Virus record (IMG/VR): IMGVR_UViG_3300029258_002750
Coordinates: 124,001 to 188,000 of that record
DNA length: 64,000 nt
Direction: 5' to 3' (one strand)
Of this stretch, positions 2,215-44,600 are shown piece by piece. The first letter of the stretch is position 1; the number at the start of each line of letters is the position of its first letter. The notes below the pieces were generated by a model. It ran no database searches and was not told the DNA's origin. It was given only the letters and a program-made list of their open reading frames with translations. The translations under genes and the position numbers were made by a program.

Positions 2215-2223
2215 GTTCTACCC
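2215..2223 (-). promoter_or_regulatory. GGGTAGAAC putative promoter, leaderless
   Basis: 6 nt before ATG 2208; its TAG is the upstream stop. Confidence 0.75.
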
Positions 2224-2493
2224 GGGACTGGCGCCCATCCAGCCGAGTTGTGTCACAGCATCAGGGATCTTGCAGCGGTCGCGCCGGACCGAGATGACTA
2301 GGCCGCTTGGCAGCTTCACCAGGTAGCAGTCCGGCGGCGCAATCATGTAGACCTTGGTGTGCCAGACGCCCTGGTCCCGCTGGTGTTGGGTGTGGATTCC
2401 CAAGTTCAGGTCTACGACCGTCCCCCACGTGTATCGGCAGCGTGGGAACGGTGGCGAGAAGATCACCCGGGAGCCGACCGTGAGGAAGTTCAC
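2218..2493 (-). CDS. SH3/KOW-like protein with C-tag
   Basis: LTVGSRVIF; ends DAVTQLGWM. Confidence 0.75.
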   Translation of the reverse strand: MNFLTVGSRVIFSPPFPRCRYTWGTVVDLNLGIHTQHQRDQGVWHTKVYMIAPPDCYLVKLPSGLVISVRRDRCKIPDAVTQLGWMGASPG

Positions 2494-3071
2494 CGGACGA
2501 CGGCGGCCAGCTGATCGATCGCGCTCAGGGGTCCCAACTCGTCCAGCTCCACGTGCAGGGAGGCGATCTTGATTCCTTTGGCCTCGAAAACGACCAGGAG
2601 CACGTAGTCCTGGTCTCGGCTCGGCTCGGTGGCGCACTTCCAGTCCTTCGCGCGCCTGCGCCATCGCCGGTAACCCGCGCCGTCGCGCATCCCCTCGGGC
2701 GGGTCGGTGTTGTCCCAGTACGGGTAGTCCTCGACGTAGTCCGGCATTACCAGGTTGCCGCGCAGCTCGTGCTCGCCCCAGGGGGAAGCGAAGGTGAAGC
2801 GACCCTTCTCGGGGATCCAGATCTTCCAGCCGCACTCCAGGTCGAACCACGGTCGCCGGAACGACTCCTTGGCGATCTCGCGGAACATATCCATCGTCGC
2901 CATCACGCGGTGGCTCCAGGTATCGACCTCGACCCTCTCGGCCTTGAGCTGAGATGCGATCAGGCGCGCCCGGTCCCGGATGATCTGCCACTGAGCGTGA
3001 CGGACGTCTCGAATGAACGCCGCCAACTTGGCCTTCGGAAAGCGCTTGCCTTCGTAGATCTTGGTGCTCAC
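2490..3071 (-). CDS. hypothetical protein with C-tag
   Basis: GTG 3071; ends SAIDQLAAV. Confidence 0.8.
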   Translation of the reverse strand: MSTKIYEGKRFPKAKLAAFIRDVRHAQWQIIRDRARLIASQLKAERVEVDTWSHRVMATMDMFREIAKESFRRPWFDLECGWKIWIPEKGRFTFASPWGEHELRGNLVMPDYVEDYPYWDNTDPPEGMRDGAGYRRWRRRAKDWKCATEPSRDQDYVLLVVFEAKGIKIASLHVELDELGPLSAIDQLAAVVR

Positions 3072-3325
3072 TCGCCTTTGCCCTCCTCGCGCAGCAGCCG
3101 ATCGCCCAGGACGGATAGACGGGTGATCGCGTTGTCGGTGTAGGGCTCCCAGTCGTCGTATTCGTCCGCTCGCGACATCTGCATCCACTCATAGGCCACG
3201 TCGCAGACGTAGATGTCTTCCTCGAAGCCGGTCATTCTTTCGGCGTACGCTGGCTCGTTGTTGATCGCGGCCGGTCGCTTCGCCAGGCCGCTCTCGCTCA
3301 TCTCGATCGCGCGGCGGACCTTCAC
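3068..3325 (-). CDS. DUF2829-like-outline protein with C-tag
   Basis: RRAIEMSESGLAKR...DDWEP; NAITRLSVL. Confidence 0.7.
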   Translation of the reverse strand: MKVRRAIEMSESGLAKRPAAINNEPAYAERMTGFEEDIYVCDVAYEWMQMSRADEYDDWEPYTDNAITRLSVLGDRLLREEGKGE

Positions 3326-3573
3326 GTCAGCGCCGCCAGCCGCGAGATGGCGTCGGCCTGGATCAGCTCGTGAGTCCAGCGGTGGTAGGTGGCCCTCGAG
3401 TTGCCGAATCGCGGGCCGAGTTGGAAATCGACGACCCACAAGAGGCACTCGCCGATCCCATCAGGATCGTGACCCTCGGGGCACTCGCCGTGGATGCTGT
3501 CGCACACCCACTTGACGACCTCGCCCTCCCAGCCGTGGTCGCGATCGATCACTCGTAGCCCGGGGCGGATCAT
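3322..3573 (-). CDS. SH3/KOW-like protein with C-tag
   Basis: IRPGLRVID..WEGEVV; ends DAISRLAAL. Confidence 0.8.
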   Translation of the reverse strand: MIRPGLRVIDRDHGWEGEVVKWVCDSIHGECPEGHDPDGIGECLLWVVDFQLGPRFGNSRATYHRWTHELIQADAISRLAALT

Positions 3574-3579
3574 GGTGAC

Positions 3580-3588
3580 GTTCTACCC
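3580..3588 (-). promoter_or_regulatory. GGGTAGAAC putative promoter, leaderless
   Basis: 6 nt before ATG 3573. Confidence 0.75.
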
Positions 3589-3618
3589 CGGGTCAGCGCT
3601 CTACCCCGGGTCAGCGCT
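3583..3618. repeat. 18-bp tandem duplication CTACCCCGGGTCAGCGCT x2
   Basis: read directly; overlaps promoter and a GTCAGCGCTGAC palindrome. Confidence 0.9.
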
Positions 3619-4016: not shown

Positions 4017-4316
4017 CTACCACCTTCCCCGAACCACACCCTGTCTTGGTTCCGTGCGGATGTCCAGCTGATCGGCAATGTTCGCCAGGCGATCGACCAC
4101 ATCGAGCGGCCGGAGGAACATCTGCCACGTGTCGGCGGTGGTGTCCGGCTCGGGGCCATCGAGCACCGTGAACTCGTACATCGGGTCGCCGAACTCCTGG
4201 TCTATGAACTGCCGGGTGATGCGCACGCGCCAGGCGGGTGTGATAGTGTCTCCGCGCCACCAGACGACCTCGCCGATCTTGAACAGGAACGGGTAGATGG
4301 GCTCGGTGAATCTCAC
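4017..4316 (-). CDS. SH3/KOW-like protein with C-tag
   Basis: FKIGEVVWW; DVVDRLANI. Confidence 0.75.
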   Translation of the reverse strand: MRFTEPIYPFLFKIGEVVWWRGDTITPAWRVRITRQFIDQEFGDPMYEFTVLDGPEPDTTADTWQMFLRPLDVVDRLANIADQLDIRTEPRQGVVRGRW

Positions 4317-6014: not shown

Positions 6015-6551
6015 TCACGACCACTCCTCCAGTCCGGTGATGAGCGCGCCGATCTCCGCCAGCTTGGTCTCGGCGACCGCAACCACGGCGCGGATCGCTT
6101 CTTCGGGCGTGTCTCCGTGCTCGGCCCATCTGCCGCCAGACGAGTCCGGGCTTCCCAGGAACGCGGTGTAGTGATCGGGCAGGATCGCGGCCAGCTGATC
6201 GATCGCCGATCCCTTCAGCGTGGTTTCGCCGGTCCGACAGTTGTACGTGCCGTGTCGCCAGTGCTCCTTGAGCTTGATCCTGCGGCACGGCGACCAGACC
6301 GTGTAGTGCCAGCCCATGTTCTCGTGCACCTCGGCGGTCCAGCCCTTGCCCATGTGCTTGGCCAGTGCGTGCGCACGGCGCCTCGCCACCTGGTAAGCCT
6401 TCCAGGTGCACTTCGTACCGCACCACGGCGCGCAGTAGAGGTCGCCTTTACGAACGGCGCGCTTCGAGTAGAGATCCTCGATCTCTTTCTCTCGCTCGGC
6501 GGCCGTCTTGATCTTCTTCCGCTTCCGCTTCCTCCTCGATCGCGTTGTCAT
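6015..6551 (-). CDS. hypothetical protein with internal C-tag
   Basis: internal SAIDQLAAI; leaderless start. Confidence 0.8.
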   Translation of the reverse strand: MTTRSRRKRKRKKIKTAAEREKEIEDLYSKRAVRKGDLYCAPWCGTKCTWKAYQVARRRAHALAKHMGKGWTAEVHENMGWHYTVWSPCRRIKLKEHWRHGTYNCRTGETTLKGSAIDQLAAILPDHYTAFLGSPDSSGGRWAEHGDTPEEAIRAVVAVAETKLAEIGALITGLEEWS

Positions 6552-6832
6552 GGTGTCGTTCTACCCAGCTCGGCGAGACGCTCGATCGCGCCGCCAGGTC
6601 GTAGCTCGTGCTCCATGAACCACTGACCATCCTCCGGTTGGTGGTTCTCCAAGAAGATGCGGTAGACCGGCGGGTGTAGCTTGGTGCCTCGATCGACGGC
6701 GACCACACGCCCGCGCCGCAGATCGAGCGAGACGACCTCCACCAACTCGCCCTTCTCGAAGCCGATCTTGGGCATGACGAGCGGCTCGACGGTGATCTCT
6801 TCCGATCGCGCGGTCAGGAAGTACTTGGGCAC
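6548..6832 (-). CDS. SH3/KOW-like protein with C-tag
   Basis: FEKGELVEV...WFMEHELRP; GAIERLAEL. Confidence 0.8.
   Translation of the reverse strand: MPKYFLTARSEEITVEPLVMPKIGFEKGELVEVVSLDLRRGRVVAVDRGTKLHPPVYRIFLENHQPEDGQWFMEHELRPGGAIERLAELGRTTP
6558..6566 (-). promoter_or_regulatory. GGGTAGAAC putative promoter, leaderless
   Basis: 6 nt before ATG 6551. Confidence 0.75.
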
Positions 6833-7972: not shown

Positions 7973-7981
7973 GTTCTACCC
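7973..7981 (-). promoter_or_regulatory. GGGTAGAAC putative promoter, leaderless
   Basis: 6 nt before ATG 7966; TAG is upstream stop. Confidence 0.75.
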
Positions 7982-8206
7982 AGGATCCAACTGAGCTAGC
8001 CGGTCGATCGCCGACGCTGGCCGCAGCTCGCTCTCGGCCATCAGGTAGGGCTTCGAGCGGTTCCCCAGCGCGAGCAGGTAGATCGAGCAGAAGCGATGGC
8101 CCTGTTCGTTGACGATGGAGCCCGCGATCTCAGCCAGGTGACCGTTGAGCACCGAGTTGAAGCCGGTGCTCGCGATGATCACGACGTCGCCCTCGTGGTA
8201 CCTCAC
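7976..8206 (-). CDS. SH3/KOW-like protein with C-tag
   Basis: YHEGDVVII...ESELRP; SAIDRLAQL. Confidence 0.8.
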   Translation of the reverse strand: MRYHEGDVVIIASTGFNSVLNGHLAEIAGSIVNEQGHRFCSIYLLALGNRSKPYLMAESELRPASAIDRLAQLDPG

Positions 8207-8683: not shown

Positions 8684-8932
8684 TCATCTCCTCGGGCGCG
8701 CAGAGCGTTCACCCAACTCGGCCAGCGCGTCGATCGCCGACAACTGGACGATCGACGGGTTGTTCTCTACCCACCGTACGGGCTCGTTGCGGCCGTCGAA
8801 CTTGATCAGGTTGTAGCGACAGTAGTCGACGCCATAGTCGAGGTGATCGACGACGGTACCGCGCACTCCTTCCGGGGCCAGGACGACGCGAGAGCCGATT
8901 GGGAGCAGTCCGTTTCCTCCAGCGCGGATCAC
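8684..8932 (-). CDS. SH3-like protein with C-tag (paralog of 31894-32133)
   Basis: LPIGSRVV..GTVVDH..WVEN..IV; SAIDALAEL. Confidence 0.8.
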   Translation of the reverse strand: MIRAGGNGLLPIGSRVVLAPEGVRGTVVDHLDYGVDYCRYNLIKFDGRNEPVRWVENNPSIVQLSAIDALAELGERSARPRR

Positions 8933-16614: not shown

Positions 16615-16859
16615 AGTCATGGGATGAGCTTGGCCTCGGCCCGCGCGGCCGGATGCGGTGTGTCTGCTGCCGCCAGTGGATGAGCCACGAGCCGACTGAG
16701 GAGGAGCCTGTTCGCAGGCGGCCTGGCCCCAACGCCTCGGTCTGCATGGGCTGCAAGCCCGTCGGCTGGACCGAGCCCTACCCGAGAGAGAACGAGACCA
16801 ACTGCGCCAGGCGCGGCTGTCCGAGCGCGGTGGAACGCCTGGGGGACCTCGTGCGATGA
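16611..16859 (+). CDS. Cys-rich paralog family member with C-tag
   Basis: CVCC..W...CMGC.P...CARRGC; SAVERLGDL. Confidence 0.8.
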   Translation: MKSWDELGLGPRGRMRCVCCRQWMSHEPTEEEPVRRRPGPNASVCMGCKPVGWTEPYPRENETNCARRGCPSAVERLGDLVR

Positions 16860-17071
16860 ACTGGATGGCTGACTACGAGGTGGGCGACGTCTTCCGGTGG
16901 TGCCGAGAGCGAGACGACCTCTGCCGGATCACGCACATCCGCGACGACGAGATCAACTTCGTCCACATCACCGGCCCGCACAAGGGGATGCCCGGCTACA
17001 CGCTGCCGCCACAGGATGTGGAGTTGGTATCGGCCGTCGAACTGCTCGGACTACTGGCGAAGCCCGGGTAG
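16856..17071 (+). CDS. SH3/KOW-like protein with C-tag
   Basis: YEVGDVFRW; SAVELLGLL. Confidence 0.8.
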   Translation: MNWMADYEVGDVFRWCRERDDLCRITHIRDDEINFVHITGPHKGMPGYTLPPQDVELVSAVELLGLLAKPG

Positions 17072-17361: not shown

Positions 17362-17561
17362 GCGGCTGCAACCACCTGCCCATGCTCTCGGAGCCCACGC
17401 TCACGCTCTACTGCGCGAAGTGCGGCGCGTGGCTACGCCAGGTCAGCGCTGACCAGCTGACGGTCGTTCCTCGAGCTGAGGCCACGCGAGGTATCCACGT
17501 CTGCGAGAAGTGCGGCCACGAATGGATCGGCGACTCCGAGTACTGCGAGGAGTGCGGGTGA
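17358..17561 (+). CDS. Zn-ribbon protein
   Basis: CAKC...CEKC. Confidence 0.7.
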   Translation: MSGCNHLPMLSEPTLTLYCAKCGAWLRQVSADQLTVVPRAEATRGIHVCEKCGHEWIGDSEYCEECG

Positions 17562-17785
17562 GGCGCGGCGATCCGGTCCTGATCATGGTGCCGAAGCACG
17601 AGCCCGAGGAGTGGGCGCGCGGCATCTTCGTCGGGGACACGCCCTACCGCACGCCGGGCGGTGGGCGCGGCGAGCGGCTGTACCACGTCACGCGGGAAGG
17701 CGAGGGCTGCTACCTGACCGCGTCCGAGTTCCGGCTGCTATCGGCAGTAGAGCGGCTCGCCGAGCTGGTCGAGGGGGGCAGATGA
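17558..17785 (+). CDS. SH3/KOW-like protein with C-tag
   Basis: RRGDPVLI; SAVERLAEL. Confidence 0.8.
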   Translation: MRRGDPVLIMVPKHEPEEWARGIFVGDTPYRTPGGGRGERLYHVTREGEGCYLTASEFRLLSAVERLAELVEGGR

Positions 17786-18065: not shown

Positions 18066-18416
18066 ATGCAGGACCCGATGGAAGTCGGCGACGGCAAGTA
18101 CACCTACTACCTCGACGATGACGACGGCCTGCTGAACTGCGACCGGCACGGCGAGCCCTGGCCAGCCTTCCGTGAGACCGGAAGCCACCACGAGGGCTGC
18201 ACGCTGGCGCTCTACCAGGCGCTCGTCGAGGCCCGCGCCGAGAACGACAAGCTGCGCCACCAATTGCTCGTGGCCAAGGTCGAGTGGGACCGTACCATCA
18301 CGCGGCTGAACAGTGCGGTCAACGCGGCCGAGAACGCGGCGACCGTCATTCGCGGCTACTACGAGCGCACGCTCAACGACAGGGAGCGGGAGCGAGGATC
18401 GGACGAGATCTGGTGA
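18066..18416 (+). CDS. hypothetical protein with coiled coil
   Basis: AGGAGG RBS. Confidence 0.75.
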   Translation: MQDPMEVGDGKYTYYLDDDDGLLNCDRHGEPWPAFRETGSHHEGCTLALYQALVEARAENDKLRHQLLVAKVEWDRTITRLNSAVNAAENAATVIRGYYERTLNDRERERGSDEIW

Positions 18417-21062: not shown

Positions 21063-21081
21063 GGCGGCTCCCTTCTCTGCC

Positions 21082-26233: not shown

Positions 26234-26255
26234 CGTCGGCTGTGTGGAGATCTGG

Positions 26256-29064: not shown

Positions 29065-29378
29065 GCTACGAGGACTACGAGGCCCACAAGGCGGAGATGG
29101 AGCGAGTTGTTCCGCAGATCGCCACCGAGCTTGGAGAGGCGCTGGAGTCCGCGCCGCCGGAGGTGAAGGGAGCCTTCTTCATCGTCGCCGGGTCGCTCGG
29201 CAACGGGATGATGGGCCTGTTCGGAGGGCGTCGAGCCGTCGCCCGAGCCCGACGACGCGGGCTTTGCGGGCTAACGTCGTTGTTCAACTCGACGGCGCGG
29301 GACGCGGCCTTCGGGATTCTGCGCAAGTGGATGGTCGAGACGTTCGACTGGTACTCCGCGCACGAAGGACTGTCGTGA
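29061..29378 (+). CDS. hypothetical protein
   Basis: coupled ORF. Confidence 0.7.
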   Translation: MSYEDYEAHKAEMERVVPQIATELGEALESAPPEVKGAFFIVAGSLGNGMMGLFGGRRAVARARRRGLCGLTSLFNSTARDAAFGILRKWMVETFDWYSAHEGLS

Positions 29379-29641
29379 ACGATCGCGGCTTCCGACCCGG
29401 TGACCGCGTGTGGATCGATCCCTCTCAGGAGGAGGTCTGGAGGGAGACTCGTCGGCCGATCTACGTGATCTCCTACTTCGGCCAGCGCGAGATCGGCGGT
29501 CGCGAGCGGCCGTGCGCGAGGCTTGCTGTAGCACCGGGGCCGAGCACCTGGGCGTCCAGGCAGAATCCGCCGTCGTGGGTCCCAATCGAATGGCTGCGGC
29601 ACGCCGATGATCTGGTGACGCGCCTCGGGAGGCTCGCGTGA
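29375..29641 (+). CDS. SH3/KOW-like protein with C-tag
   Basis: FRPGDRVWI; DLVTRLGRL. Confidence 0.8.
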   Translation: MNDRGFRPGDRVWIDPSQEEVWRETRRPIYVISYFGQREIGGRERPCARLAVAPGPSTWASRQNPPSWVPIEWLRHADDLVTRLGRLA

Positions 29642-29877
29642 GCGAGTTCCGCGTTCGCGATCGGGTGAGGATCGCCGAGGATCGTCGGCGTCCCGGCAAG
29701 TTCATGATTCTGGGACTCGAGCCCAAGCGGGCACGCGGGGCCGACCTGGCGGTTCCGTGTGCGCTCGTGCAGCGGCTCAGGGAGGGTCTGGGAGAGATCA
29801 ATCAGGTCTTCTGGATCGAGGAGAGCGCGCTGGAGCACGCCGAGGATGCTGTGTCGCGGCTCGGGAGGCTCGCGTGA
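29638..29877 (+). CDS. SH3/KOW-like protein with C-tag
   Basis: FRVRDRVRI; DAVSRLGRL. Confidence 0.8.
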   Translation: MSEFRVRDRVRIAEDRRRPGKFMILGLEPKRARGADLAVPCALVQRLREGLGEINQVFWIEESALEHAEDAVSRLGRLA

Positions 29878-30278
29878 GGGGCAACACGACGACCTGTCCG
29901 ATGTGCCGTGGGGAGGCCAAGCGTACCGGGGCTTCCGAGGTTGATCTGGTCCTTCAGCTCCGCCAGCTGTTCGCCTGTCAGTTTTGCGACTGGTCGGGAT
30001 GGTTACCCGGCGAGGAGCTGGACAACATGCGCGCGCTCGGCGGTGTCTCGCCCGAGTTCCGCGTTGGGGATCGCGTGCGAGTCAACGAGCACTACGGCCT
30101 CCAGCCTGGCATCTACGTGGTGATGGAGACGGGCCTGCGCGTCGATCCCGAGACTCACGGACTGAGGATGTCGGCTCTCATCTCGCTCGAACGGGTCGGC
30201 GTTGACGCCGTCACGATCTCTGTCGAGTACCTTGACCATGTGGACGACGCTGTGACCAGGCTGGGTAGGCTCTCGTGA
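29874..30278 (+). CDS. Zn ribbon + SH3-like protein with C-tag
   Basis: CPMC...CQFC; FRVGDRVRV; DAVTRLGRL. Confidence 0.8.
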   Translation: MRGNTTTCPMCRGEAKRTGASEVDLVLQLRQLFACQFCDWSGWLPGEELDNMRALGGVSPEFRVGDRVRVNEHYGLQPGIYVVMETGLRVDPETHGLRMSALISLERVGVDAVTISVEYLDHVDDAVTRLGRLS

Positions 30279-30511
30279 GCTTCGCGACACTGTTCTGCGG
30301 CGGCTTCCGCGCGGGTGACCGTGTGCGTGTGAAGGGCGTCGAGATCATCGGCCGGATCAGGAAGTTTGAGATGCGCGCGGAGGAAGTGAAGGGCCTCGTG
30401 ATGTGGGCGATGGTGGTGTCGGAGACCCCTCGCATCGGCGCCGTCTGGTCGAAGATCGCCGAGCTGGAGCACGCGAGCGATGCCGTCACACGGCTGGGTC
30501 GGTTGGTGTGA
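30275..30511 (+). CDS. SH3/KOW-like protein with C-tag
   Basis: FRAGDRVRV; DAVTRLGRL. Confidence 0.8.
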   Translation: MSFATLFCGGFRAGDRVRVKGVEIIGRIRKFEMRAEEVKGLVMWAMVVSETPRIGAVWSKIAELEHASDAVTRLGRLV

Positions 30512-30604
30512 AGGTCTACCTGATCTATCTTCGTCGTCGCGCTCGTGCGCGAGAGGGAGGTCCGGGGATCGGTCGTCGATGCACTGGCGGAGGTGGTGCG
30601 ATGA
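30508..30604 (+). pseudogene. frameshifted C-tagged mini-gene
   Basis: GTG 30508 frame VKVYLIY; +1 frame FVVALVREREVRGSVVDALAEVVR* ends in ATGA overlap. Confidence 0.5.
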
Positions 30605-30840
30605 GGGAGACGGCCTTCGCCGTTGGCGACCGCGTGCGGTGGGCGGTTGGTGTCGAGCATGTTGCGCATCTCGCAGCGTCTCGTATGCGGGGAAGGGTCA
30701 CGAATATCGTAAGAGGTGGTCGTCTGCACGTGGTCTGGGACGGATCGTGCTACGAGTGTCCTCCGGTCTTCGTGTGGCCCAAAGACCTGGAGACGGTAGA
30801 CGCCGTCTCTCAGCTTGGGGAACTGGCCGATGGAGTATGA
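30601..30840 (+). CDS. SH3/KOW-like protein with C-tag
   Basis: FAVGDRVRW; DAVSQLGEL. Confidence 0.8.
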   Translation: MRETAFAVGDRVRWAVGVEHVAHLAASRMRGRVTNIVRGGRLHVVWDGSCYECPPVFVWPKDLETVDAVSQLGELADGV

Positions 30841-31099
30841 AGGCCCTGCGTTCCGGCCTGGTGATCGTGTCCGCTGGCTCTCGTGGAAGAACAACCGCGC
30901 TGGCTTCCCGTCTGTTCGACACGGATGGGTCCGCCGAATCGTCGAGCCAGCGCGCTCCGCTCACGGGCCGCGTCTGCTGATCGATGTCGATCCGTTCTGG
31001 GGCGAGGTACCGACGGCGATTGAGCTTCTGCCGCACCTGCACGGGGTCCGCAAGCTCTCGGCCATCGACGCGCTCGCCCAGCTGATGAGGAACCCGTGA
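30830..31099 (+). CDS. SH3/KOW-like protein with C-tag
   Basis: FRPGDRVRW; SAIDALAQL. Confidence 0.8.
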   Translation: MEYEGPAFRPGDRVRWLSWKNNRAGFPSVRHGWVRRIVEPARSAHGPRLLIDVDPFWGEVPTAIELLPHLHGVRKLSAIDALAQLMRNP

Positions 31100-31144: not shown

Positions 31145-31897
31145 GTGGGAATGCAGGGTCGCGCTGTTCCGCCAGGGCCGCCGCGTCGGCCTATGCGCTC
31201 ATTCCACACGAAGCCGCCCGAGCCGCCGATGTTTAGCCTTCGGCCGAGCGAGCGTCGTGAGGACGAGCGGTGCGCGCTCTGTCATGACGGGCCGACCGGC
31301 CTGGTCATCTGCCGGGGATGCGGCGCGCTGACGCACGCCCAGTGCCTCCTCCACCACGGCTCGTGCCCGACCCCGGGCTGCGACGAGCGCGATCCCATGC
31401 AGGAGCCGCCGCCGAGCGTGCGCGGCCAGCTCAAGGAGTGGCGCAACTTCTTCCGGGGCGAGAAAGGTCCGAGAGAGGAGCCTCGCTGTCGTCACAAGTT
31501 CGGCAAGGACCAGCGGTGCGTCTACTGCCACAGGGACGTGGACGACATCTGGCAGGACGGTCCGCCGGTCTACGAGGATCCTGACGCTCGCGGGCCGTGC
31601 AAGAAGTGCGGCAAGGAGGTCTTCGCCGGGCTGAACTGCCTAGCAGAGCAGGACCAGTACGGCGAGGATGCCGCCTACTACCACATGAGCTGCTGGCGGA
31701 AGCTCAAGGACCAGGAGCGAGAGAAGCGCAGGCCGCGCTGGTGGGCGAGTGCAGAGCTGTGGGTAGCCGCGCTCTTCGTGATGTTCCTGATTGCTGGTAT
31801 AGGCGAGTTGATCGTCACCGGGGAGCCCACGTTGATGCTCACCGCCATCTTGGCATTGGTGCTCTGGCTCATGGACCAGAAGCGGCGGCGGCGATGA
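31145..31897 (+). CDS. multi-Zn-finger protein with C-terminal membrane anchor
   Basis: several CxxC/HxxC; two C-terminal hydrophobic segments. Confidence 0.75.
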   Translation: MGMQGRAVPPGPPRRPMRSFHTKPPEPPMFSLRPSERREDERCALCHDGPTGLVICRGCGALTHAQCLLHHGSCPTPGCDERDPMQEPPPSVRGQLKEWRNFFRGEKGPREEPRCRHKFGKDQRCVYCHRDVDDIWQDGPPVYEDPDARGPCKKCGKEVFAGLNCLAEQDQYGEDAAYYHMSCWRKLKDQEREKRRPRWWASAELWVAALFVMFLIAGIGELIVTGEPTLMLTAILALVLWLMDQKRRRR

Positions 31898-32133
31898 GCC
31901 TGATCCCTGTTGGCACCAGAGTCCGGCGCTGCGGCTGGCCGACCGATCCTCACCACGACTACGTGGGGACCGTCATCGACCACAACCACAACACCGAGAA
32001 TCCGCAGAGCCGCCTGCGCTACGACGTGATCGAGTGGGACCATCTTCCGGGCACGCGCTCCCAGTGGGTCGAGAACCACGCTGGCATCGTGCCGCTGAAC
32101 GCGATCGAGCTGATGGGAGAGCTGGTCGAATGA
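31894..32133 (+). CDS. SH3-like protein with C-tag (paralog of 8684-8932)
   Basis: IPVGTRVR..GTVIDH..WVEN..IV; NAIELMGEL. Confidence 0.8.
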   Translation: MSLIPVGTRVRRCGWPTDPHHDYVGTVIDHNHNTENPQSRLRYDVIEWDHLPGTRSQWVENHAGIVPLNAIELMGELVE

Positions 32134-32516: not shown

Positions 32517-32756
32517 ATGGTGCGAGCCGGGCTAAGAGAGGGCGAGAGGGTCTGGGTGCGGGCGATCGGGGGGTCGCTCGAGCGCGCGCCCCGCCGGGCC
32601 ACGGTCACCTGCACCGGGTCTTCGGCTCTGCCGACCCCGGCTCGCTACTACGACGTCGAGTTCGACGCGGGCGATGAGCGGCGGCTCTGGCTCGGCGACC
32701 ACAACTACGACGTGTGGAAGCGATCCGCGATCGATCGGCTAGGAGAGCTGGCATGA
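32517..32756 (+). CDS. SH3/KOW-like protein with C-tag
   Basis: LREGERVWVR; SAIDRLGEL. Confidence 0.8.
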   Translation: MVRAGLREGERVWVRAIGGSLERAPRRATVTCTGSSALPTPARYYDVEFDAGDERRLWLGDHNYDVWKRSAIDRLGELA

Positions 32757-33331: not shown

Positions 33332-33621
33332 CTACCGTCTTCGTCGTCCTGCGCGACTACATGGGCGATCATCACGCCCACCCCGAGTTCGAGTCGGTCT
33401 GGTGGAACAGGGAAGAGGCCCGGGAGGAGTGTTTGCGGCTCGCGGAGGAGGAGATGACAAGGAGCACCGGCTACATCCTCCGCCTTCGGGTCACCGACAG
33501 CGTAGTACGTATTGAGCACAAGCTCACTGGTGGCACCTGGGCGGATCGGACGCTCTTCTTCACGAAGCCCGTCGGGATTCGCGGGTCAGCTGTCATGGCG
33601 CTAGCGAGTCTGGTGCGATGA
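33328..33621 (+). CDS. hypothetical protein with C-tag
   Basis: SAVMALASL. Confidence 0.7.
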   Translation: MTTVFVVLRDYMGDHHAHPEFESVWWNREEAREECLRLAEEEMTRSTGYILRLRVTDSVVRIEHKLTGGTWADRTLFFTKPVGIRGSAVMALASLVR

Positions 33622-33851
33622 GAGCGCGGCCGACGGACGACTTCTGGTACCGCTTCGACCCCGGCGACCGGGTGGAGGGCATTCCCGGCTCGGCGACGCT
33701 TCGCGGCCGACGCGGCACCTTTCTCGGCTACCACGACCGCAACGACACGCTGGTCGTCGTCCAGTTCGACGACGAGGTCGACCCGGAATCCGAGCCGATC
33801 TCGCTGCTCCAGAAGCTCGGGGCGGTGGAGAGTCTGGGAGAACTGGCGTGA
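33618..33851 (+). CDS. SH3/KOW-like protein with C-tag
   Basis: FDPGDRVEG; GAVESLGEL. Confidence 0.8.
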   Translation: MRARPTDDFWYRFDPGDRVEGIPGSATLRGRRGTFLGYHDRNDTLVVVQFDDEVDPESEPISLLQKLGAVESLGELA

Positions 33852-35107: not shown

Positions 35108-35664
35108 GCGAGTTCGATCCCGGCCACGGCTACAACGACGGCTACGGAGACTTCGGCCGCGATCCGGCTCCATACGATCCCCAGACTGCGCTGTGGGTGA
35201 TGGGGGCGATCGACGAGCTGCGCGGCCTCGGGATCATCGAGGAGATCGCGGGCGAGAATCCCCTTGGCGGCCGTGAAGACAGGAAGCGCTACCGCGAGCT
35301 GAAGAAGTCCGGCTTTGTTCCCCAGCTGACCGAAGCGATGAAGGTCGTCAAGGCCCACGTGCTCGCCGAAGATCAGCCTCTCTTCGAGCGCCTGTTCCGA
35401 GGGATCATCGAAGAAGGGTGGGAGTCGATCCGACGCGAGCGTGATCTCATGCTCGAAGAAGAACGACAGTCGCAGGTCAGCGCTGACGACGACGATGATC
35501 CCTACGCGCCGTTCCGCGAGTTCTACAAGCGGCACGGGATCTATCTGCCCAAGGATTCGACTGCCGAGGGGCGCCCAGATGCGCAAAAAAAGGTGCCATC
35601 GGAAGAAGAGCCGCGCCCGCGCCCCGAGGACTACGGCTTCCCGAGCGACTGGGTGCTGCTATGA
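35104..35664 (+). CDS. acidic hypothetical protein
   Basis: GTG 35104 coupled. Confidence 0.7.
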   Translation: MSEFDPGHGYNDGYGDFGRDPAPYDPQTALWVMGAIDELRGLGIIEEIAGENPLGGREDRKRYRELKKSGFVPQLTEAMKVVKAHVLAEDQPLFERLFRGIIEEGWESIRRERDLMLEEERQSQVSADDDDDPYAPFREFYKRHGIYLPKDSTAEGRPDAQKKVPSEEEPRPRPEDYGFPSDWVLL

Positions 35665-36008
35665 CGAGTGTTCCGCCGATCGACCCACCATGCGCTGAGT
35701 GCGGGGCTGGCGAAGGTGAGCCGTGCGTAGGGCCGCACAGCGCGGACGTCGAGGGCGAGGAGCACGTCTACGCGATCGGCGACCGGGTCCAGTGGACCTC
35801 CTCCAGCGACGGCGGAATGAGCCGACGCCAGGTCGGCCCGATCGAGGGGACCGTTGCTGAGATCATGGACTCCGGCCGCGTTTGCGTGGACTGGGACAAG
35901 CCGTTCGACAGGAAGTATCGGTCGATCCCGATCGTCGTCTGGCCCGCTGACATCGAGCCGGTTGATGCTGTCTCGCGACTGGGGGATCTGCTCGATGACG
36001 GCGCCTGA
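35661..36008 (+). CDS. Zn finger + SH3-like protein with C-tag
   Basis: CAECGA..GEPC; YAIGDRVQW; DAVSRLGDL. Confidence 0.8.
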   Translation: MTSVPPIDPPCAECGAGEGEPCVGPHSADVEGEEHVYAIGDRVQWTSSSDGGMSRRQVGPIEGTVAEIMDSGRVCVDWDKPFDRKYRSIPIVVWPADIEPVDAVSRLGDLLDDGA

Positions 36009-36240
36009 GCCGGAGTTCAGCGTCGGCGACCACGTCGTTCACTATGTGCCTGAGGTCGGCATCCGCGAGCGCGGCGAGGTCAACTGGGTGCGCACGAGCA
36101 AAACACGCGTCAGCTACGATGTGATCTTCAGGCACGGGGACGGCCGTCTCAAGGGCCTGCTCAAGGAGGTCGATCCGGCGTGGCTGCTGCCGCTCTCAGC
36201 CGTCGAGCGGCTCGGAGACCTGGGAGACCTGGCAGGATGA
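35995..36240 (+). CDS. SH3/KOW-like protein with C-tag
   Basis: FSVGDHVVH; SAVERLGDL. Confidence 0.8.
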   Translation: MTAPEPEFSVGDHVVHYVPEVGIRERGEVNWVRTSKTRVSYDVIFRHGDGRLKGLLKEVDPAWLLPLSAVERLGDLGDLAG

Positions 36241-42560: not shown

Positions 42561-42811
42561 AGCGTCGGCTTCCAGTCGGAACCCCGGTAGTGATCACCGG
42601 CGGCGGCCACGAAGGGGCACTCGGCTACATCACCTGGGACGAGGCTCTCAGCGCGCTGCCGGGCTTCGTTACGGTCCAGCCGGACGACTACAGGGGATTT
42701 GCCGTTCGAGTGCGGATCGAGGACGTGGAGCCCCGCAGCGCGGTCGATGCCCTGGCATCGGTCGTGAGGGAGGAAGAACGTGGAGCGGACGCTGGTACTG
42801 ATCAAGCCTGA
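42557..42811 (+). CDS. SH3/KOW-like protein with C-tag
   Basis: LPVGTPVVITGGGHEGALG; SAVDALASV. Confidence 0.8.
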   Translation: MKRRLPVGTPVVITGGGHEGALGYITWDEALSALPGFVTVQPDDYRGFAVRVRIEDVEPRSAVDALASVVREEERGADAGTDQA

Positions 42812-43229
42812 CGCGGTCTCGCGCGGGCTCGTCGGAGAGATCATCTCCCGCTTCGAGCGGAAGAAGCTGAAGCTCCTCGGTCTGAAGATGCTGCGCGCCG
42901 ACGGGGAGCTTGTCGCACAGCACTATGCCGAGCACGTTGACAAGCCGTTCTACGCGGAGCTGGCCCTCTTCACGATGAGCGGGCCGATCGTGGCGATGGT
43001 TCTGGCGGGTCACCAGGCCGTTCACGTCGTGCGCACCTTGATGGGACCGACCGATGGGGTAGGCGCGCCGCTCGGAACGATCCGGGGTGACTTCGCGTCC
43101 GGCGATCCGATCCGCGAGAACCTCGTCCACGGCTCCGACTCAGCTGAGTCGGCTGCGCGGGAACTCGAGTTGTTCTTCGGCGGCGACTTCGATGTGGACG
43201 ACCATCGGGTCAGCGCTGACGGGCCGTGA
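42780..43229 (+). CDS. ndk: nucleoside-diphosphate kinase
   Basis: ERTLVLIKPDAV.RGLVGEIISRFE, GTIRGDF, NLVHGSDS. Confidence 0.95.
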   Translation: MERTLVLIKPDAVSRGLVGEIISRFERKKLKLLGLKMLRADGELVAQHYAEHVDKPFYAELALFTMSGPIVAMVLAGHQAVHVVRTLMGPTDGVGAPLGTIRGDFASGDPIRENLVHGSDSAESAARELELFFGGDFDVDDHRVSADGP

Positions 43230-43513
43230 CCGAGAACGAGTTCATACGAGAGATCACGGCTCTCGGGTTCTACCCGCTCACCGGCCACGGCACGCGGCCA
43301 GCGAGCGACCTCGTCCACGATCGCCTGAGCATGATGGTCGATCTTCGCGGGCTGAGGCGGCGAGCAACCTACCGCCGTGGCAATCCCTACCTCAGCGCTC
43401 TTGCGGCAATAGCGCGTGAGATCAGCAAGCTCGATGCGATTGATCAGCTCGCCCTGCTGGGAGATACGCTGCCGACCGAGGTAGAACAGGGGTTAGAGGA
43501 ACATGATCTATGA
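43226..43513 (+). CDS. hypothetical protein with C-tag
   Basis: DAIDQLALL. Confidence 0.7.
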   Translation: MTENEFIREITALGFYPLTGHGTRPASDLVHDRLSMMVDLRGLRRRATYRRGNPYLSALAAIAREISKLDAIDQLALLGDTLPTEVEQGLEEHDL

Positions 43514-43860
43514 GCAGGAAGAAGCCCGGAATCCCGATGAGAATCACGGGGCCGGTCCTGTTGGCCTTGCGAATGGCTGGGGCGCATCATCTTTACGAGA
43601 ACGAGAACGATGACGAGGTCCGGTGGTGGCTGGACCGGCTGCCTCGACCGGACTGGGAAGAGGCGGCTCGTAGCTACACAGGTGTTGGCTCGAAGACTAT
43701 TCGGATTCCGGCCGCCAAGGTGGACTCGTTCATCCGCTTCTTGAAGATTGCTGCCACGAATCCGCACCAGGGGCCTGGGGTCGGTGGTGCGATCGAGAGC
43801 CGGATCGAGAAGCTCGAGTCGATGAGCAGCATCGAGCGGCTCGGTGCGATCGAGCCGTGA
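43510..43860 (+). CDS. hypothetical protein, paralog of 42141-42560, with C-tag
   Basis: SSIERLGAI. Confidence 0.8.
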   Translation: MSRKKPGIPMRITGPVLLALRMAGAHHLYENENDDEVRWWLDRLPRPDWEEAARSYTGVGSKTIRIPAAKVDSFIRFLKIAATNPHQGPGVGGAIESRIEKLESMSSIERLGAIEP

Positions 43861-44216
43861 GGTTCTGGGAGGCGGTCCGCTGGAGCAAGAGCGGTGTTGC
43901 GTCCTACGTGGTGAAGGAGCCAGGCTGTCCAGAAAACCCGATGACTGAGGAGGAGATCGAGGAGGCGTTCTGCCTCTCCAGCCGCCTGAACGTGAAGATC
44001 GCGCAGGGTCAGCCGGTTCTCATCAACGACAACCACTACGCAGCCGATCGCGTGCCGGATCTGATCGAGAACAGCGTCGAGTGGGAGCCATTTCCGCCCG
44101 TCCGCGACGCGATTTCTGAGCTGGGGAGTCTGACCCCCGAGGTAGAACTGGGGCATGACCCTGGACGAGGCCCTGGGATGGAGCGATCGGCGCGCGGCGG
44201 TCCGTACACCAGCTGA
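43857..44216 (+). CDS. DUF2829-like-outline protein with C-tag
   Basis: MRFWEAVRWSKSGVA...VEWEP; DAISELGSL. Confidence 0.7.
   Translation: MRFWEAVRWSKSGVASYVVKEPGCPENPMTEEEIEEAFCLSSRLNVKIAQGQPVLINDNHYAADRVPDLIENSVEWEPFPPVRDAISELGSLTPEVELGHDPGRGPGMERSARGGPYTS
44140..44148 (+). promoter_or_regulatory. AGGTAGAAC promoter variant, leaderless
   Basis: 6 nt before ATG 44155. Confidence 0.65.
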
Positions 44217-44385
44217 TCCGATCGAACCGTGCGCGGTCATAGATCCACCGTGCACGTGTTGTCCGACGGTTGCGCTCACGGCCACGCGCGAGCCGACTGA
44301 CGTCGCTTGGGCCTACACCTTCGAGAACTGGGAGCCGGTCAGCGCCGACCTGGGCGCGCTGGCGATGAGCGGGACGCGCCGGTGA
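44155..44385 (+). CDS. DUF2829-like-outline protein
   Basis: MTLDEALGWSDRRAAVR...FENWEP. Confidence 0.7.
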   Translation: MTLDEALGWSDRRAAVRTPADPIEPCAVIDPPCTCCPTVALTATREPTDVAWAYTFENWEPVSADLGALAMSGTRR

Positions 44386-44600
44386 AGTTCCGTGTGGGGC
44401 AGGAGGTAGTGGTTACGGCAGGCGATGCCCAGGTCAACCGAGGGGCGGTCGCCAAGGTGACTCAGATCGAACATGCGTCTGTGAACCCCCACCGGGTGCG
44501 GATCAGCCACCACGGATGGAGCACGTGGGTCACGCCCGATCAGATCGAACATGCGAACGCGATCGAGGGCCTCGGTGGCCTGGCGGATGTCGTCCGATGA
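44382..44600 (+). CDS. SH3/KOW-like protein with C-tag
   Basis: KFRVGQEVVV; NAIEGLGGL. Confidence 0.8.
   Translation: MKFRVGQEVVVTAGDAQVNRGAVAKVTQIEHASVNPHRVRISHHGWSTWVTPDQIEHANAIEGLGGLADVVR

What the first reader, a model, noticed from the sequence alone, without database searches (positions are those of the whole stretch)
2218..44600. Large expansion (~27) of diverged SH3/KOW/Tudor-like mini-proteins, each ending in the tag
Many 70-90 aa ORFs start with [FY]-x-x-G-[DE]-x-V (FRVGDRVRV, FSVGDHVVH, MKVGDRIVY, YEVGDVFRW, FEKGELVEV, KFRVGQEVVV). They end with a W/Y-x-x-x-x-E/D-L-E/R turn immediately before the tag (WFYENELREVSAIDAL, WFYASELEPASAIDLL, VWPADIEPVDAVSRL). Loops are highly variable, but 8684 and 31894 are clear paralogs (GTV.DH...RY..I..D...WVEN...IV.L.AI). 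The fold call is pattern-based. Inference: a library of variable binding domains on a constant docking handle, i.e. an adaptor repertoire, possibly targeting host defence proteins.
Basis: partly seen in the sequence, partly recalled or inferred. Interest (0 to 1): 0.72.

Follow-up and report, generated by a model that had tools for sequence, protein, structure and literature searches.

The report
KOW-like mini-proteins sharing a helix tag
An uncultured 275-kb phage from sediment and seawater carries about 25 tiny, fast-evolving SH3/KOW-type barrel proteins that all end in one conserved short helix, and over 100 other proteins of the same phage carry that helix too, which points to a phage-wide docking or targeting code not described before.

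Summary
Between window 2218 and 44600 I count about 25 genes of 66-142 aa with a 'GDRV' start, a 'W..EL[ER]P' turn and the tag [SD]-A-[IV]-[DETS]-x-L-[AG]-x-[LIV].

Two members fold in AlphaFold2 as five strands plus a C-terminal helix, and that helix is the tag (pLDDT 87.8 and 74.6). Their best structural matches are KOW domains (Spt5, NusG, uL24, eS4), NdhS, PetP, PsaE and PWWP, so the SH3-like call holds.

'Paralog expansion' holds only loosely. With the tag removed, pairwise similarity survives in three small groups. A tag-free profile built from outside sequences recognises about 18 window members.

The tag is not specific to the barrels. It sits near the C-terminus of 70 (strict pattern) to 104 (broad pattern) of my 410 called genes, against 0.1 expected. 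It also lies inside larger proteins such as DNA polymerase A and helicases, and it ends the RNase H. Synonymous codons vary freely, so selection acts on the protein.

Related metagenomic phages carry the same arrays. The phage has T4-type head genes, and the minis lie in early-type 'hyperplastic' gene blocks.

My best reading is a variable barrel joined to a shared docking helix. The partner and the targets are unknown, and the host-defence idea is untested.

The parts
2218..2493 (-). mini, 91 aa, starts ..LTVGSRVIF, tag DAVTQLGWM
   Evidence: tag-free external barrel HMM E=0.008; sequence; 63%-identical relative P0037 elsewhere
3322..3552 (-). borderline mini, 76 aa, tag DAISRLAAL
   Evidence: barrel HMM E=0.08; weak N-terminal motif
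4017..4316 (-). mini, 99 aa, FKIGEVVWW, tag VVDRLANI followed by a 19-aa tail
   Evidence: barrel HMM E=0.014
6548..6832 (-). mini, 94 aa, FEKGELVEV ... WFMEHELRPGGAIERLAEL
   Evidence: barrel HMM E=3.9e-7; rows in A2 and A3
7976..8206 (-). mini, 76 aa, YHEGDVVII ... ESELRPASAIDRLAQL
   Evidence: barrel HMM E=0.009
8684..8932 (-). mini, 82 aa, paralog of 31894
   Evidence: phmmer and jackhmmer pair; barrel HMM E=8.9e-8
16856..17071 (+). mini by pattern, 71 aa, YEVGDVFRW ... VELVSAVELLGLL
   Evidence: pattern and alignment A3 only; no barrel-HMM hit
17558..17785 (+). mini by pattern, 75 aa, RRGDPVLIM ... SEFRLLSAVERLAEL
   Evidence: pattern and A3 only; barrel HMM E=2.5, not significant
18413..18637 (+). 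mini by pattern, 74 aa, VRVGMIVEIV ... YYFASELEEASAIDQLAEI
   Evidence: pattern and A3 only; barrel HMM E=1.1, not significant
19612..19854 (+). mini, 80 aa; second modelled member
   Evidence: AF2 pLDDT 74.6, strands 8-11, 23-30, 41-46, 52-56, 60-62 and helix 65-73, which is the tag; Foldseek matches eS4 KOW, PWWP, PetP, NusG; barrel HMM E=0.04
20114..20344 (+). mini, 76 aa, MKVGDRIVY ... QLEPEPAVDQLARL
   Evidence: weak Pfam DUF1918 hit, E=0.065; barrel HMM E=0.22; ortholog in G001 with tag 90% and barrel 58% identical
20341..20769 (+). 142 aa: N-terminal barrel (paralog of 19612), an internal tag SAIDLLAAL, then a second tag SAIERLAAV and a helical tail
   Evidence: phmmer pair with 19612; sequences
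27838..28062 (-). mini, 74 aa; first modelled member
   Evidence: AF2 pLDDT 87.8, five strands and helix 57-69, which is the tag; Foldseek, VIA and Atlas match KOW, NdhS, uL24, NusG; barrel HMM E=3.3e-7
29375..29641 (+). mini, 88 aa, FRPGDRVWI ... tag LVTRLGRLA
   Evidence: barrel HMM E=1.5e-4
29638..29877 (+). mini, 79 aa, FRVRDRVRI ... WIEESALEHAEDAVSRLGRLA
   Evidence: barrel HMM E=0.11; rows in A2 and A3
29874..30278 (+). 134 aa: Cys-rich N-terminus, then barrel (FRVGDRV) and tag DAVTRLGRLS
   Evidence: barrel HMM E=5e-4
30275..30511 (+). mini, 78 aa, FRAGDRVRV ... AELEHASDAVTRLGRLV
   Evidence: barrel HMM E=0.004
30601..30840 (+). mini, 79 aa, missed by my gene caller: FAVGDRVRW ... VWPKDLETVDAVSQLGEL
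   Evidence: ATG preceded by GGAGGTGG; not scored with the HMM
30830..31099 (+). mini, 89 aa, FRPGDRVRW ... tag SAIDALAQL
   Evidence: barrel HMM E=8.2e-6
31894..32133 (+). mini, 79 aa, paralog of 8684
   Evidence: barrel HMM E=2.4e-7
32556..32756 (+). mini, about 66-79 aa (start uncertain), tag SAIDRLGELA
   Evidence: barrel HMM E=1.3e-6
33618..33851 (+). mini, 77 aa, paralog of 27838
   Evidence: phmmer pair; best barrel-HMM hit, E=9e-9
35661..36008 (+). 115 aa with barrel (YAIGDRV) ... VVWPADIEPVDAVSRLGDL
   Evidence: barrel HMM E=1.8e-5
35995..36240 (+). mini, 81 aa, missed by my gene caller: FSVGDHVVH ... LLPLSAVERLGDL
   Evidence: not scored with the HMM
44382..44600 (+). mini, 72 aa, KFRVGQEVVV ... 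WVTPDQIEHANAIEGLGGL
   Evidence: barrel HMM E=9.2e-5; 58%-identical relative P0069 elsewhere

Best explanation
SHOWN. The window belongs to a complete 275,101-bp phage record from sediment and seawater metagenomes. The phage has a contractile tail and T4-type head genes.

About 25 genes in window 2218-44600 encode 66-142 aa proteins built from two parts. The first part is a five-stranded SH3-like small beta-barrel of the KOW kind. Its strands keep a pattern (beta1 'phi-x-x-G-D-R-V-x-V', beta2 'G-x-V', beta4 'W-phi', then 'E-L-[ER]-P'), while its loops differ freely in length and sequence. The second part is a 10-12-residue amphipathic helix with an N-cap, consensus [SD]-A-[IV]-[DE]-x-L-[AG]-x-[LIV]-[AV]. 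This helix is the most conserved part of each protein.

The same helix ends, or sits inside, roughly 100 further proteins of the phage with unrelated bodies: Zn-ribbon proteins, helical proteins, RNase H, DNA polymerase A and helicases. It is conserved at the protein level, not at the DNA level. The same gene arrays exist in relatives down to 56% sheath identity and in several other metagenomic contigs.

The genes lie in densely packed blocks in which many genes are preceded by a phage-specific promoter-like 11-mer that is missing from the tail module.

INFERRED. Each mini works as a two-part adaptor. The variable barrel recognises its own target, a protein or a nucleic acid. The shared helix lays its hydrophobic face (A0, I/V1, L4, G/A5, L7, A/V8) into a groove of one common, abundant partner. 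That brings a large, quickly changing set of early phage proteins, and some replication enzymes, to the same place or machine in the infected cell.

The partner is not identified, and neither are the targets, host defence included.
For: Fold:
- AF2 models give pLDDT 87.8 and 74.6, each with five strands and a terminal helix.
- Foldseek on PDB, AFDB and BFVD, VIA-align and the Atlas all match KOW, NusG, Spt5, uL24, eS4, NdhS, PetP, PsaE and PWWP.
- The A3 profile reaches Tsr0524 at 2.2e-5, Spt5 KOW at 4e-4 and PSHCP at 9e-4 by sequence.
- The A2 profile finds tandem SH3/Tudor/KOW arrays in the 1.84-billion-protein library.

Family beyond the tag:
- A tag-free HMM built from 33 outside sequences finds 28 own proteins against 1 reversed decoy at E<0.1.

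Tag:
- 70 genes carry the strict pattern against 0.1 expected.
- Synonymous codons are free at the conserved positions: Ala GCG41/GCC29/GCT11, Leu CTG48/CTC40, Gly with all four codons.
- The tag is the most informative block of A3.
- It is 80-100% identical between orthologs whose barrels are 58-84% identical.
- It occurs on unrelated bodies and internally in larger proteins.

Clade-wide spread:
- G001 has 43 tag matches and G002 has 6 by HMM, with many more visible by eye.
- Contigs L055, L064, L065 and L066 are arrays of tagged minis.
- 57 of 64 small library hits carry the tag, and some are tandem barrel-tag-barrel-tag proteins.

Fast evolution:
- dN/dS is 0.49-0.61 for the minis against 0.28 for the sheath.

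Gene context:
- The CnGGGTAGAAC motif occurs 62-63 times, with about 2 expected by my base-composition estimate. It sits back to back at divergent junctions and is absent from the tail module.
Against: - No partner was found. The only complex prediction, a SEC-C paralog with a mini, gave no answer.
- The helix is confidently modelled next to the barrel, and small KOW proteins with a similar terminal helix exist in AFDB (rank 1: TM 0.71 by query / 0.75 by hit over 67 aligned positions, query residues 1-65). For the minis it could therefore be an ordinary part of the fold.
- About a hundred proteins competing for one site need a very abundant partner.
- No member has a known ligand, and no Pfam or PHROG family passes its threshold.
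- Both AF2 jobs used alignments made of the candidate family itself, which may favour a common fold.
- Seven of the 25 members rest on the pattern, on a paralog, or on both.
Confidence: 0.45

Rival explanations
1. The tag is a prohead-packaging signal. Tagged proteins, the barrels included, would be loaded into the T4-type capsid and injected with the DNA as a ready-made arsenal, like T4 internal proteins.
For: The phage has a T4-type portal, a Gp23-type capsid protein and a prohead protease of family S77. The tagged proteins are small, numerous and fast-evolving. The start of the tag, S-phi-phi-[DE]-R-phi, resembles the N-terminal motif M-S-L-[FY]-[DE]-R-[VL] carried by eight larger proteins, which looks like a T4-type capsid-targeting sequence (the T4 comparison is from my own knowledge). 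About a quarter of tags contain L-[GA]-E, which fits the T4 protease's L/I-x-E rule.
Against: A separate N-terminal motif already fits the capsid-targeting role and sits on other proteins. Tagged genes lie behind the CnGGGTAGAAC motif, which is absent from the tail module, so they do not look co-regulated with those structural genes. Tags occur inside DNA polymerase A and helicases. The two motifs differ at the bulky positions (L-F/Y against A-I/V).
Confidence: 0.15
2. There is no common partner. The helix is a structural cap that closes small domains. It is shared because the genes descend from one barrel-plus-helix ancestor and because 3' gene ends are exchanged by recombination in these cassette-like blocks.
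For: The helix has high pLDDT beside the barrel. AFDB holds about-70-aa KOW proteins with a matching terminal helix. N-cap Ser/Asp and an acidic residue at N3 are generic helix-start features. Tandem barrel-tag-barrel-tag proteins exist. Repeated 11-mers flank many genes, as the PeSL cassettes do in T4-type phages (PMC2839356, PMC4122927).
Against: A peripheral cap is rarely the most conserved part of a domain, yet here it outranks every strand. The same nine residues recur on bodies with no detectable similarity and inside large enzymes. It is kept across relatives with only 56% sheath identity.
Confidence: 0.15
3. The tag is a self-associating 'sticker'. Tagged proteins would bundle through their helices into mixed oligomers or a condensate-like factory, with multi-tag proteins acting as cross-linkers.
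For: The helix has a wide hydrophobic face with a small central residue. Proteins with two tags exist, such as 20341-20769, P0012, P0051, P0082, P0101 and DNA polymerase A. Replication enzymes carry it.
Against: Ten to twelve residues are short for a stable bundle. No test was run. The net charge of the tag and its tail is negative, which disfavours homotypic packing.
Confidence: 0.1
4. The tag controls protein lifetime. It could be a degron read by a protease or adaptor, which would clear early proteins on a timer. Or it could be an anti-degron that hides the C-termini of small proteins.
For: It lies near the C-terminus in most carriers, with a median of about 5 residues after it. It marks early-type genes. 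Bacterial adaptors and degrons are short C-terminal peptides (my own knowledge: ssrA, the SspB XB tail).
Against: The tag is not at the extreme end and is internal in about 20 proteins. In the roughly 20 largest and Walker-A proteins I scanned, the only AAA+ ATPases were MoxR-type, with VWA partners, and the only protease was the prohead protease. The genome was not scanned in full.
Confidence: 0.08
5. The conservation lies in the DNA: a promoter part, a terminator or a recombination site at gene ends, and the peptide is a by-product.
For: Gene 3' ends overlap the CnGGGTAGAAC element of the next gene. This explains recurrent endings such as ...PG* and ...LGRT...
Against: Third codon positions vary freely at the conserved residues, and substitutions keep chemical class (I/V, L/I/V, G/A, D/E). 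The distance from tag to stop and to the 11-mer is variable. No base upstream of the 11-mer is conserved.
Confidence: 0.03

Closest known systems
KOW domains (Pfam PF00467; NusG/Spt5 C-terminal domains, ribosomal uL24 and eS4)
   Same: The same five-stranded SH3-like barrel (Foldseek probability 1.0, TM about 0.6; VIA Z 6.9-7.4). The same sequence motif, 'G-D-x-V-x-V ... G-x-x-G-x-V'. The profile reaches Spt5 KOW2-3 at 4e-4, uL24 at 6e-3 and NusG at 7e-3.
   Different: The minis are stand-alone 66-95 aa proteins with no NGN domain or ribosomal context. None passes a Pfam KOW threshold; the best is KOW2_Spt5 at 15.7 bits against a cut-off of 28.9. They carry a conserved C-terminal helix and occur in dozens of copies per genome.
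Small stand-alone SH3-like subunits of cyanobacterial complexes (Tsr0524/PetP-type, NdhS/Ssl0352, PsaE, PSHCP)
   Same: Single about 55-80 aa SH3-like barrels, several of which sit in solved structures as small subunits of photosynthetic complexes. They give the best sequence-profile hit (Tsr0524, 2.2e-5; PSHCP, 9e-4) and top structural hits.
   Different: They are cellular, single-copy and conserved, and they have no shared tag. There is no evidence that the phage proteins touch photosynthetic complexes.
Uncharacterised small KOW/SH3-like phage proteins (BFVD, e.g. 'KOW domain-containing protein' of Streptomyces phage Yaboi; DUF1918, DUF4314)
   Same: The same fold and size, and common among phage accessory genes. 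There are weak hits to DUF1918 and a language-model lead to DUF4314.
   Different: No tag and no large per-genome expansion. tblastn of a tandem member against 50,697 phage records found nothing.
T4-type hyperplastic regions with PeSL promoter cassettes (PMC2839356, PMC4122927)
   Same: Blocks of small, variable, mostly unknown genes between conserved modules. Many are individually preceded by a repeated promoter-like motif that could also drive modular shuffling.
   Different: The motif is different (CnGGGTAGAAC, often exactly 6 nt before the start codon). Stem-loops were not examined. T4-type regions are not known to share a protein tag.
Variable domain plus constant docking peptide adaptors (poxvirus ankyrin/PRANC F-box proteins; the bacterial SspB ClpX-binding tail). 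Analogy from my own knowledge.
   Same: The architecture: a diversified recognition module joined to a short constant C-terminal element that plugs into one host machine. In poxviruses these form multigene families.
   Different: No sequence or structural relation. The partner here is unknown, and the tag is also present on enzymes.
Capsid-loading peptides (T4 N-terminal capsid-targeting sequence; encapsulin C-terminal cargo-loading peptide). From my own knowledge.
   Same: Short terminal peptides shared by unrelated cargo proteins of an HK97-fold or T4-type shell. This phage has a T4-type head module.
   Different: The T4 signal is N-terminal and is cleaved off, and a motif of that kind exists here on other proteins. 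The encapsulin consensus is different. Packaging was not tested.

Membership tests
SH3-like small beta-barrel fold | Five antiparallel strands forming a closed or partly open barrel of about 55-65 residues, with a 3-10 turn before the last strand | tested here: met
   DSSP on two AF2 models shows 5 strands. Model 2 has a short helix at 57-59 between strands 4 and 5. The matched chains are consistently SH3-like barrels. Only 2 of 25 members were modelled.
KOW (PF00467) | KOW sequence motif: conserved Gly with alternating hydrophobic residues (G-D-x-V-x-V ... G-x-x-G-x-V) | tested here: met
   The A3 consensus has G34/36, D27, R26, V27, then G27 and V/I30. The profile reaches Spt5, uL24 and NusG KOW chains at 4e-4 to 7e-3.
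KOW (PF00467) | Scores above Pfam's gathering threshold | tested here: not met
   Ten members were scanned and none hit PF00467. The best related hit is PF23284 KOW2_Spt5 at 15.7 bits against 28.9.
KOW (PF00467) | Context: fused to an NGN domain or part of a ribosomal protein; binds the ribosome, RNA polymerase or nucleic acid | tested here: not met
   The minis are stand-alone genes of 66-95 aa. Binding was not testable.
Tudor / PWWP 'royal' domains | Aromatic cage that reads methylated Lys or Arg | tested here: inconclusive
   PWWP and Tudor chains are among the structural matches. Only one aromatic position (W/F/Y in beta4) is semi-conserved in A3, so no cage is evident.
Canonical SH3 (PF00018), proline-peptide binding | ALYDY and WW motifs, with a PxxP-binding groove | tested here: not met
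   No Pfam SH3 hit, and these motifs are absent from A3.
One paralogous gene family (recent duplications) | Pairwise or iterative sequence similarity outside the shared tag | tested here: inconclusive
   With the tag stripped, only {27838, 33618}, {19612, 20341} and {31894, 8684, -18548} connect. An external tag-free profile links about 18 window members, with 28 genome hits against 1 decoy at E<0.1.
T4-type internal proteins (capsid-targeted) | N-terminal capsid-targeting sequence followed by an L/I-x-E protease site | tested here: not met
   The minis start directly with the barrel. The M-S-L-[FY]-[DE]-R-[VL]...[LI]-x-E motif is on eight other, larger proteins.
PeSL-type cassette genes of T4-type hyperplastic regions | A repeated promoter (and stem-loop) motif flanking small variable ORFs | tested here: inconclusive
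   There are 62-63 copies of CnGGGTAGAAC upstream of genes, 25 of them exactly 6 nt before the start. Promoter activity and stem-loops were not tested.

The most novel reading that the evidence does not exclude
A clade of environmental jumbo phages uses a protein 'address code'. One 10-12-residue amphipathic helix, present on a quarter or more of all phage proteins, would route them to a single hub or compartment. The carriers include arrays of hypervariable KOW-like barrels, Zn-ribbon proteins and replication enzymes. The barrel arrays would then be an evolvable library of target binders working from that hub. This would be a phage counterpart of F-box or PRANC-type adaptor families, or of cargo-loading peptides, on a scale not described for any phage.
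Probability: 0.35. Interest if true: 0.85.

Novelty: new variant of a known kind. Interest (0 to 1): 0.66.

Why it matters
Small SH3/KOW-like accessory proteins are common in phages and almost all are unexplained.

Here they come as a large, fast-evolving array joined to a motif that also marks about a hundred other proteins. That gives an experimental handle: a single peptide whose partner can be fished out. Finding the partner would assign a place of action to a quarter of the proteome of an uncultured phage lineage at once.

It would also test whether phages use short linear 'address' motifs as eukaryotic viruses do. If the barrels are target binders, the arrays are a natural library of minimal binding scaffolds.

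Tried and rejected
- Cultured-phage relatives: megablast and blastn of two window stretches, and tblastn of a 338-aa protein and of a tandem mini, against 50,697 phage records found nothing. The capsid protein has only distant T4-superfamily relatives, at 32% identity or less.
- Family libraries: Pfam and PHROGs on ten minis, and Pfam on ten other tagged proteins, gave nothing above threshold.
- Word-based homolog search of one mini found only itself and one ortholog.
- Pairwise and jackhmmer similarity among tag-stripped minis is largely absent.
- Sliding-clamp idea (the tag as a T4-type clamp-binding tail): no gp45-type family was found in the genome. The polymerase is family A. The tag does not fit the bacterial clamp-binding consensus that I recall. 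I set the idea aside.
- Complex prediction of a SEC-C-motif paralog with a mini gave 'no answer', score 0.01. This is evidence neither for nor against binding.
- T4 late promoter TATAAATA: zero copies, so gene timing could not be read that way.
- No tRNA or Rfam match in the window.
- Two literature searches for a shared C-terminal motif in phage proteins found nothing relevant.
I therefore could not measure whether the tag's hydrophobic face is buried.

Full report
**Where the window lies.** The window is bases 124,001-188,000 of a 275,101-bp virus record with direct terminal repeats, rated complete. G+C is about 65%. The same DNA is held by sediment and seawater metagenome runs. The phage encodes a contractile-tail sheath and a baseplate hub. 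It also has a T4-type portal and a Gp23-type capsid protein, and a prohead protease of family S77 interrupted by an intein. Other genes include DNA polymerase A (also with an intein), DnaB-like helicases, RecA, a class II ribonucleotide reductase and MoxR/VWA pairs. No cultured phage is close: nucleotide searches were empty, and the capsid protein is at most 32% identical to T4-superfamily proteins. The 1750-aa ORF at 46537-51789 is a UvrD-type helicase fused to a 2'-5' RNA-ligase-like domain.

**The tag.** I called genes with a codon-usage score, which gave 410 genes. The strict pattern A[IV][DETS].L[AG].[LIV] lies within 35 residues of the stop in 70 genes. Shuffling each protein gives 0.1 on average. 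A broader pattern finds 104 genes, 86 of them among the 193 genes between genome positions 96 and 179 kb. About ten more tagged ORFs had been missed by the caller. Twenty-two further strict matches are internal, against 0.6 expected. They are often followed by x-[DE]-P-[DE], and they occur in DNA polymerase A (twice), a DnaB-type fragment and a ResIII helicase, while the RNase H carries the tag at its C-terminus.

At the conserved positions the synonymous codons vary freely (Ala GCG41/GCC29/GCT11, Leu CTG48/CTC40, Gly in all four codons), and replacements keep chemical class. The constraint is therefore on the peptide. Its features are a Ser/Asp N-cap, an acidic residue three positions on, and hydrophobic or small residues at 0, 1, 4, 5, 7 and 8. 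These describe a short amphipathic helix, and both structure models place a helix exactly there.

**The mini-proteins.** In the range 2218-44600 I count 25 members, listed under 'parts'. Two of them (30601-30840 and 35995-36240) had been missed by my caller.

With the tag cut off, all-against-all phmmer and jackhmmer link only {27838, 33618}, {19612, 20341} and {31894, 8684, and -18548 outside the window}.

A profile of 22 members (A2) was searched against 1.84 billion representative proteins and gave 210 hits at E<=0.001. The hits are of two kinds. One kind is 65-150-aa proteins from elsewhere with the same start, the same turn and the tag; 57 of the 64 small hits carry the tag, and some are tandem barrel-tag-barrel-tag proteins. 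The other kind is long proteins made of repeated SH3-, Tudor- or KOW-type domains such as SH3_15, DUF1918 and KOW5_SPT5.

From 33 of the small outside sequences I built an HMM of the barrel alone, with the tag removed. I scored it against the phage's tag-stripped proteome plus reversed decoys. Fourteen real proteins came before the first decoy (E=6e-4), and there were 28 real hits against 1 decoy at E<0.1. Eighteen of the 25 window members are in that set. The caveat is that the outside sequences were themselves found with a profile of window members.

**Fold.** AlphaFold2 on 27838-28062 with alignment A2 gave mean pLDDT 87.8, five strands, and a helix at residues 57-69, which is the tag. AlphaFold2 on 19612-19854 with the 36-row alignment A3 gave 74.6 with the same topology, including a short helix before the last strand and the tag helix at 65-73.

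Foldseek against the PDB returns the following for the two models:
- Spt5 KOW2-3;
- NusG;
- uL24 and eS4;
- NdhS/Ssl0352;
- PetP;
- PWWP.

VIA-align, run without Foldseek, gives Spt5 KOW6-7 at Z 7.4, Ssl0352 at 7.3, NdhS at 7.2 and NusG at 7.1. These Z values are middling, but the top rows agree. AlphaFold DB clusters, BFVD and the Atlas agree as well: KOW-domain proteins, uL24, NusG, NdhS and many unnamed small phage proteins. By sequence alone, the A3 profile reaches Tsr0524 (2.2e-5), Spt5 KOW (4e-4), PSHCP (9e-4), PsaE, uL24 and NusG.

The SH3-like call stands, with KOW as the nearest named family. Pfam's own KOW threshold is not reached. Both models used alignments of the candidate family itself, and the three most peripheral members (16856, 17558, 18413) were not modelled.

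**What varies and what does not.** In A3 the most informative columns are the Gly of beta1, the Gly of beta2, and tag positions A, V/I, L, A/G and L. The loop columns are near the floor, and loop lengths differ by up to about 15 residues. Between this phage and its relative G001 (sheath 88% identical, dN/dS 0.28), three mini orthologs have dN/dS of 0.49-0.61 at similar or higher dS (0.29-0.61). Their barrels are 58-84% identical and their tags 80-100% identical, with loop indels. Many minis have no ortholog in the available part of G001.

**Spread.** G001 (159 kb, 58% complete) has 43 tag matches. G002 (sheath 56% identical) has 6 by HMM, and by eye many more with a shifted consensus ([DS]-[PAV]-[IV]-[DE]-x-L-[AG]-x-L), again on 'GDRV' barrels. 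Four unrelated short metagenomic contigs are arrays in which most genes are tagged minis: 12 of the 13 translated genes in L065 and 6 of 7 in L066. The architecture is therefore a trait of a phage lineage, not of one genome.

**Gene context.** An 11-mer, CnGGGTAGAAC, occurs 62-63 times, where I estimate about 2 from base composition. It is nearly always oriented toward a downstream gene. In 25 cases the start codon lies exactly 6 nt after it. At divergent junctions it appears back to back (10472/10493, 28307/28311, 39191/39195). It is absent from the tail module, at window coordinates 77-142 kb. It looks like a phage-specific promoter element that would give leaderless or short-leader transcripts, but this is an inference. 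It often overlaps the 3' end of the preceding tagged gene, which explains endings such as ...PG* and ...LGRT... No base upstream of it is conserved, and its distance to the tag varies, so the tag is not part of it. The layout recalls the PeSL promoter cassettes of T4-type hyperplastic regions (PMC2839356, PMC4122927).

**Interpretation.** What is shown is a set of two-part proteins: a variable KOW-like barrel plus a conserved amphipathic helix that about a hundred unrelated proteins share. The mechanism is inferred.

I judge a docking or targeting helix for one common partner most likely (0.45). It is the simplest account of a peptide that is more conserved than the domains it is attached to, that occurs on unrelated bodies, in tandem and internally, and that persists across a lineage.

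The rivals are:
- prohead packaging (0.15);
- a structural cap spread by descent and recombination (0.15);
- self-association (0.10);
- control of protein lifetime (0.08);
- a DNA-level element (0.03, largely excluded).

Nothing here tests it.

**Limits.** The host is unknown. There are no expression or proteomic data. Only two structure jobs and one complex job were available. I could not inspect the model coordinates. My gene calls are home-made.

Noticed in passing
window 24804-25220, 26256-26588, 26585-27199, 62053-62607 (+); outside the window at -44526..-43423, -16163..-15369, -15359..-14436, 84921-85751; portal at 63810 onward: Eight larger proteins start M/V-S-[LF]-[FYR]-[DE]-R-[VLIC] and have an [LI]-x-E within the next 5-26 residues, for example MSLRDRLLDE|AAA and VSFYDRIVE|GGG. 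The portal starts MALRDRAV. With a T4-type prohead protease, portal and capsid protein in the genome, this looks like a T4-style N-terminal capsid-targeting sequence with a protease site. The T4 comparison is from my own knowledge.
   Followed up: partly
62-63 sites genome-wide, e.g. window 2222(-), 6565(-), 7980(-), 10472(-)/10493(+), 13283(+), 28307(-)/28311(+), 39191(-)/39195(+), 42127(+), 51852(+), 57642(-): A conserved 11-mer, CnGGGTAGAAC, lies upstream of genes. In 25 cases the start codon is exactly 6 nt after it. It is back to back at divergent junctions and absent from the tail module. It is probably a phage-specific promoter giving leaderless or short-leader mRNAs, and a possible site of cassette shuffling. 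It is also present in related contigs L064 and L065.
   Followed up: partly
window 9888(-), 10245(-), 21112(-), 60532(-) and five more sites outside the window: A second composite motif: ..ACTTAC..N..TGTGAGAAC-N12-TTGTTGAGAGG, then about 20 nt to the start codon. It has 9 copies, in front of 9375-9836, 9925-10197, 20766-21062 and 59467-60483 among others. It looks like a different, stronger promoter class with a conserved leader.
   Followed up: no
window 1552-2208(-), 7358-7945(-); outside at -3333..-2686(-), -979..-476(-); also L052 at about 3030(-) in relative G002: Four paralogs of 167-218 aa end in a SEC-C zinc motif (GRNxxCxCxSGKKxKRCCGR; Pfam PF02810). They sit inside the tag-rich blocks, and one is in the tag-rich block of a distant relative. 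A complex prediction with a mini gave no answer.
   Followed up: partly
outside the window: -98914..-98507(+) and -28526..-28074(-): Fragments of structural proteins carry the tag. One is a 135-aa protein with a copy of the capsid protein's N-terminal segment (IVSVQPMTQPVGGITFYRPRYGS against IASVQPMTGPIGGIAFYRPRYAS), followed by WEPSAVDRLAAL. The other is a 150-aa protein with an internal tag that clusters with the tail sheath.
   Followed up: no
window 17782-18042, 19932-20117, 27551-27841(-), 3068-3325(-), 40899-41024(-), 43857-44216, 44947-45225; outside at -1239..-958: A second recurrent class of tagged small proteins has '[DN]-W-[EQL]-P-x-x-P-[KR]-[DN]' directly before the tag and no barrel pattern. 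Its fold is unknown.
   Followed up: no
window 16267-16614(+) and 16509-16859(+): Two overlapping-frame neighbours, missed by my gene caller, encode paralogous Cys-rich (Zn-ribbon-like) proteins that end ...RRCP[DS]AVERLG[ND]LVR.
   Followed up: no
window 46537-51789(+): A 1750-aa protein combines a UvrD-type helicase with a 2'-5' RNA-ligase-superfamily domain. At first sight I took it for a tape measure.
   Followed up: partly
outside the window: genome 40880-43639 (DNA polymerase A) and 191916-194747 (prohead protease): Both genes carry inteins. The protease carries Hint plus a LAGLIDADG homing endonuclease, and the polymerase carries an intein splicing domain.
   Followed up: no
window 21063-22737 and 25587-26255: Two stretches of 1.7 kb and 0.7 kb have no confident gene call, no tRNA and no Rfam match. 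They lie in the middle of the small-gene region.
   Followed up: no
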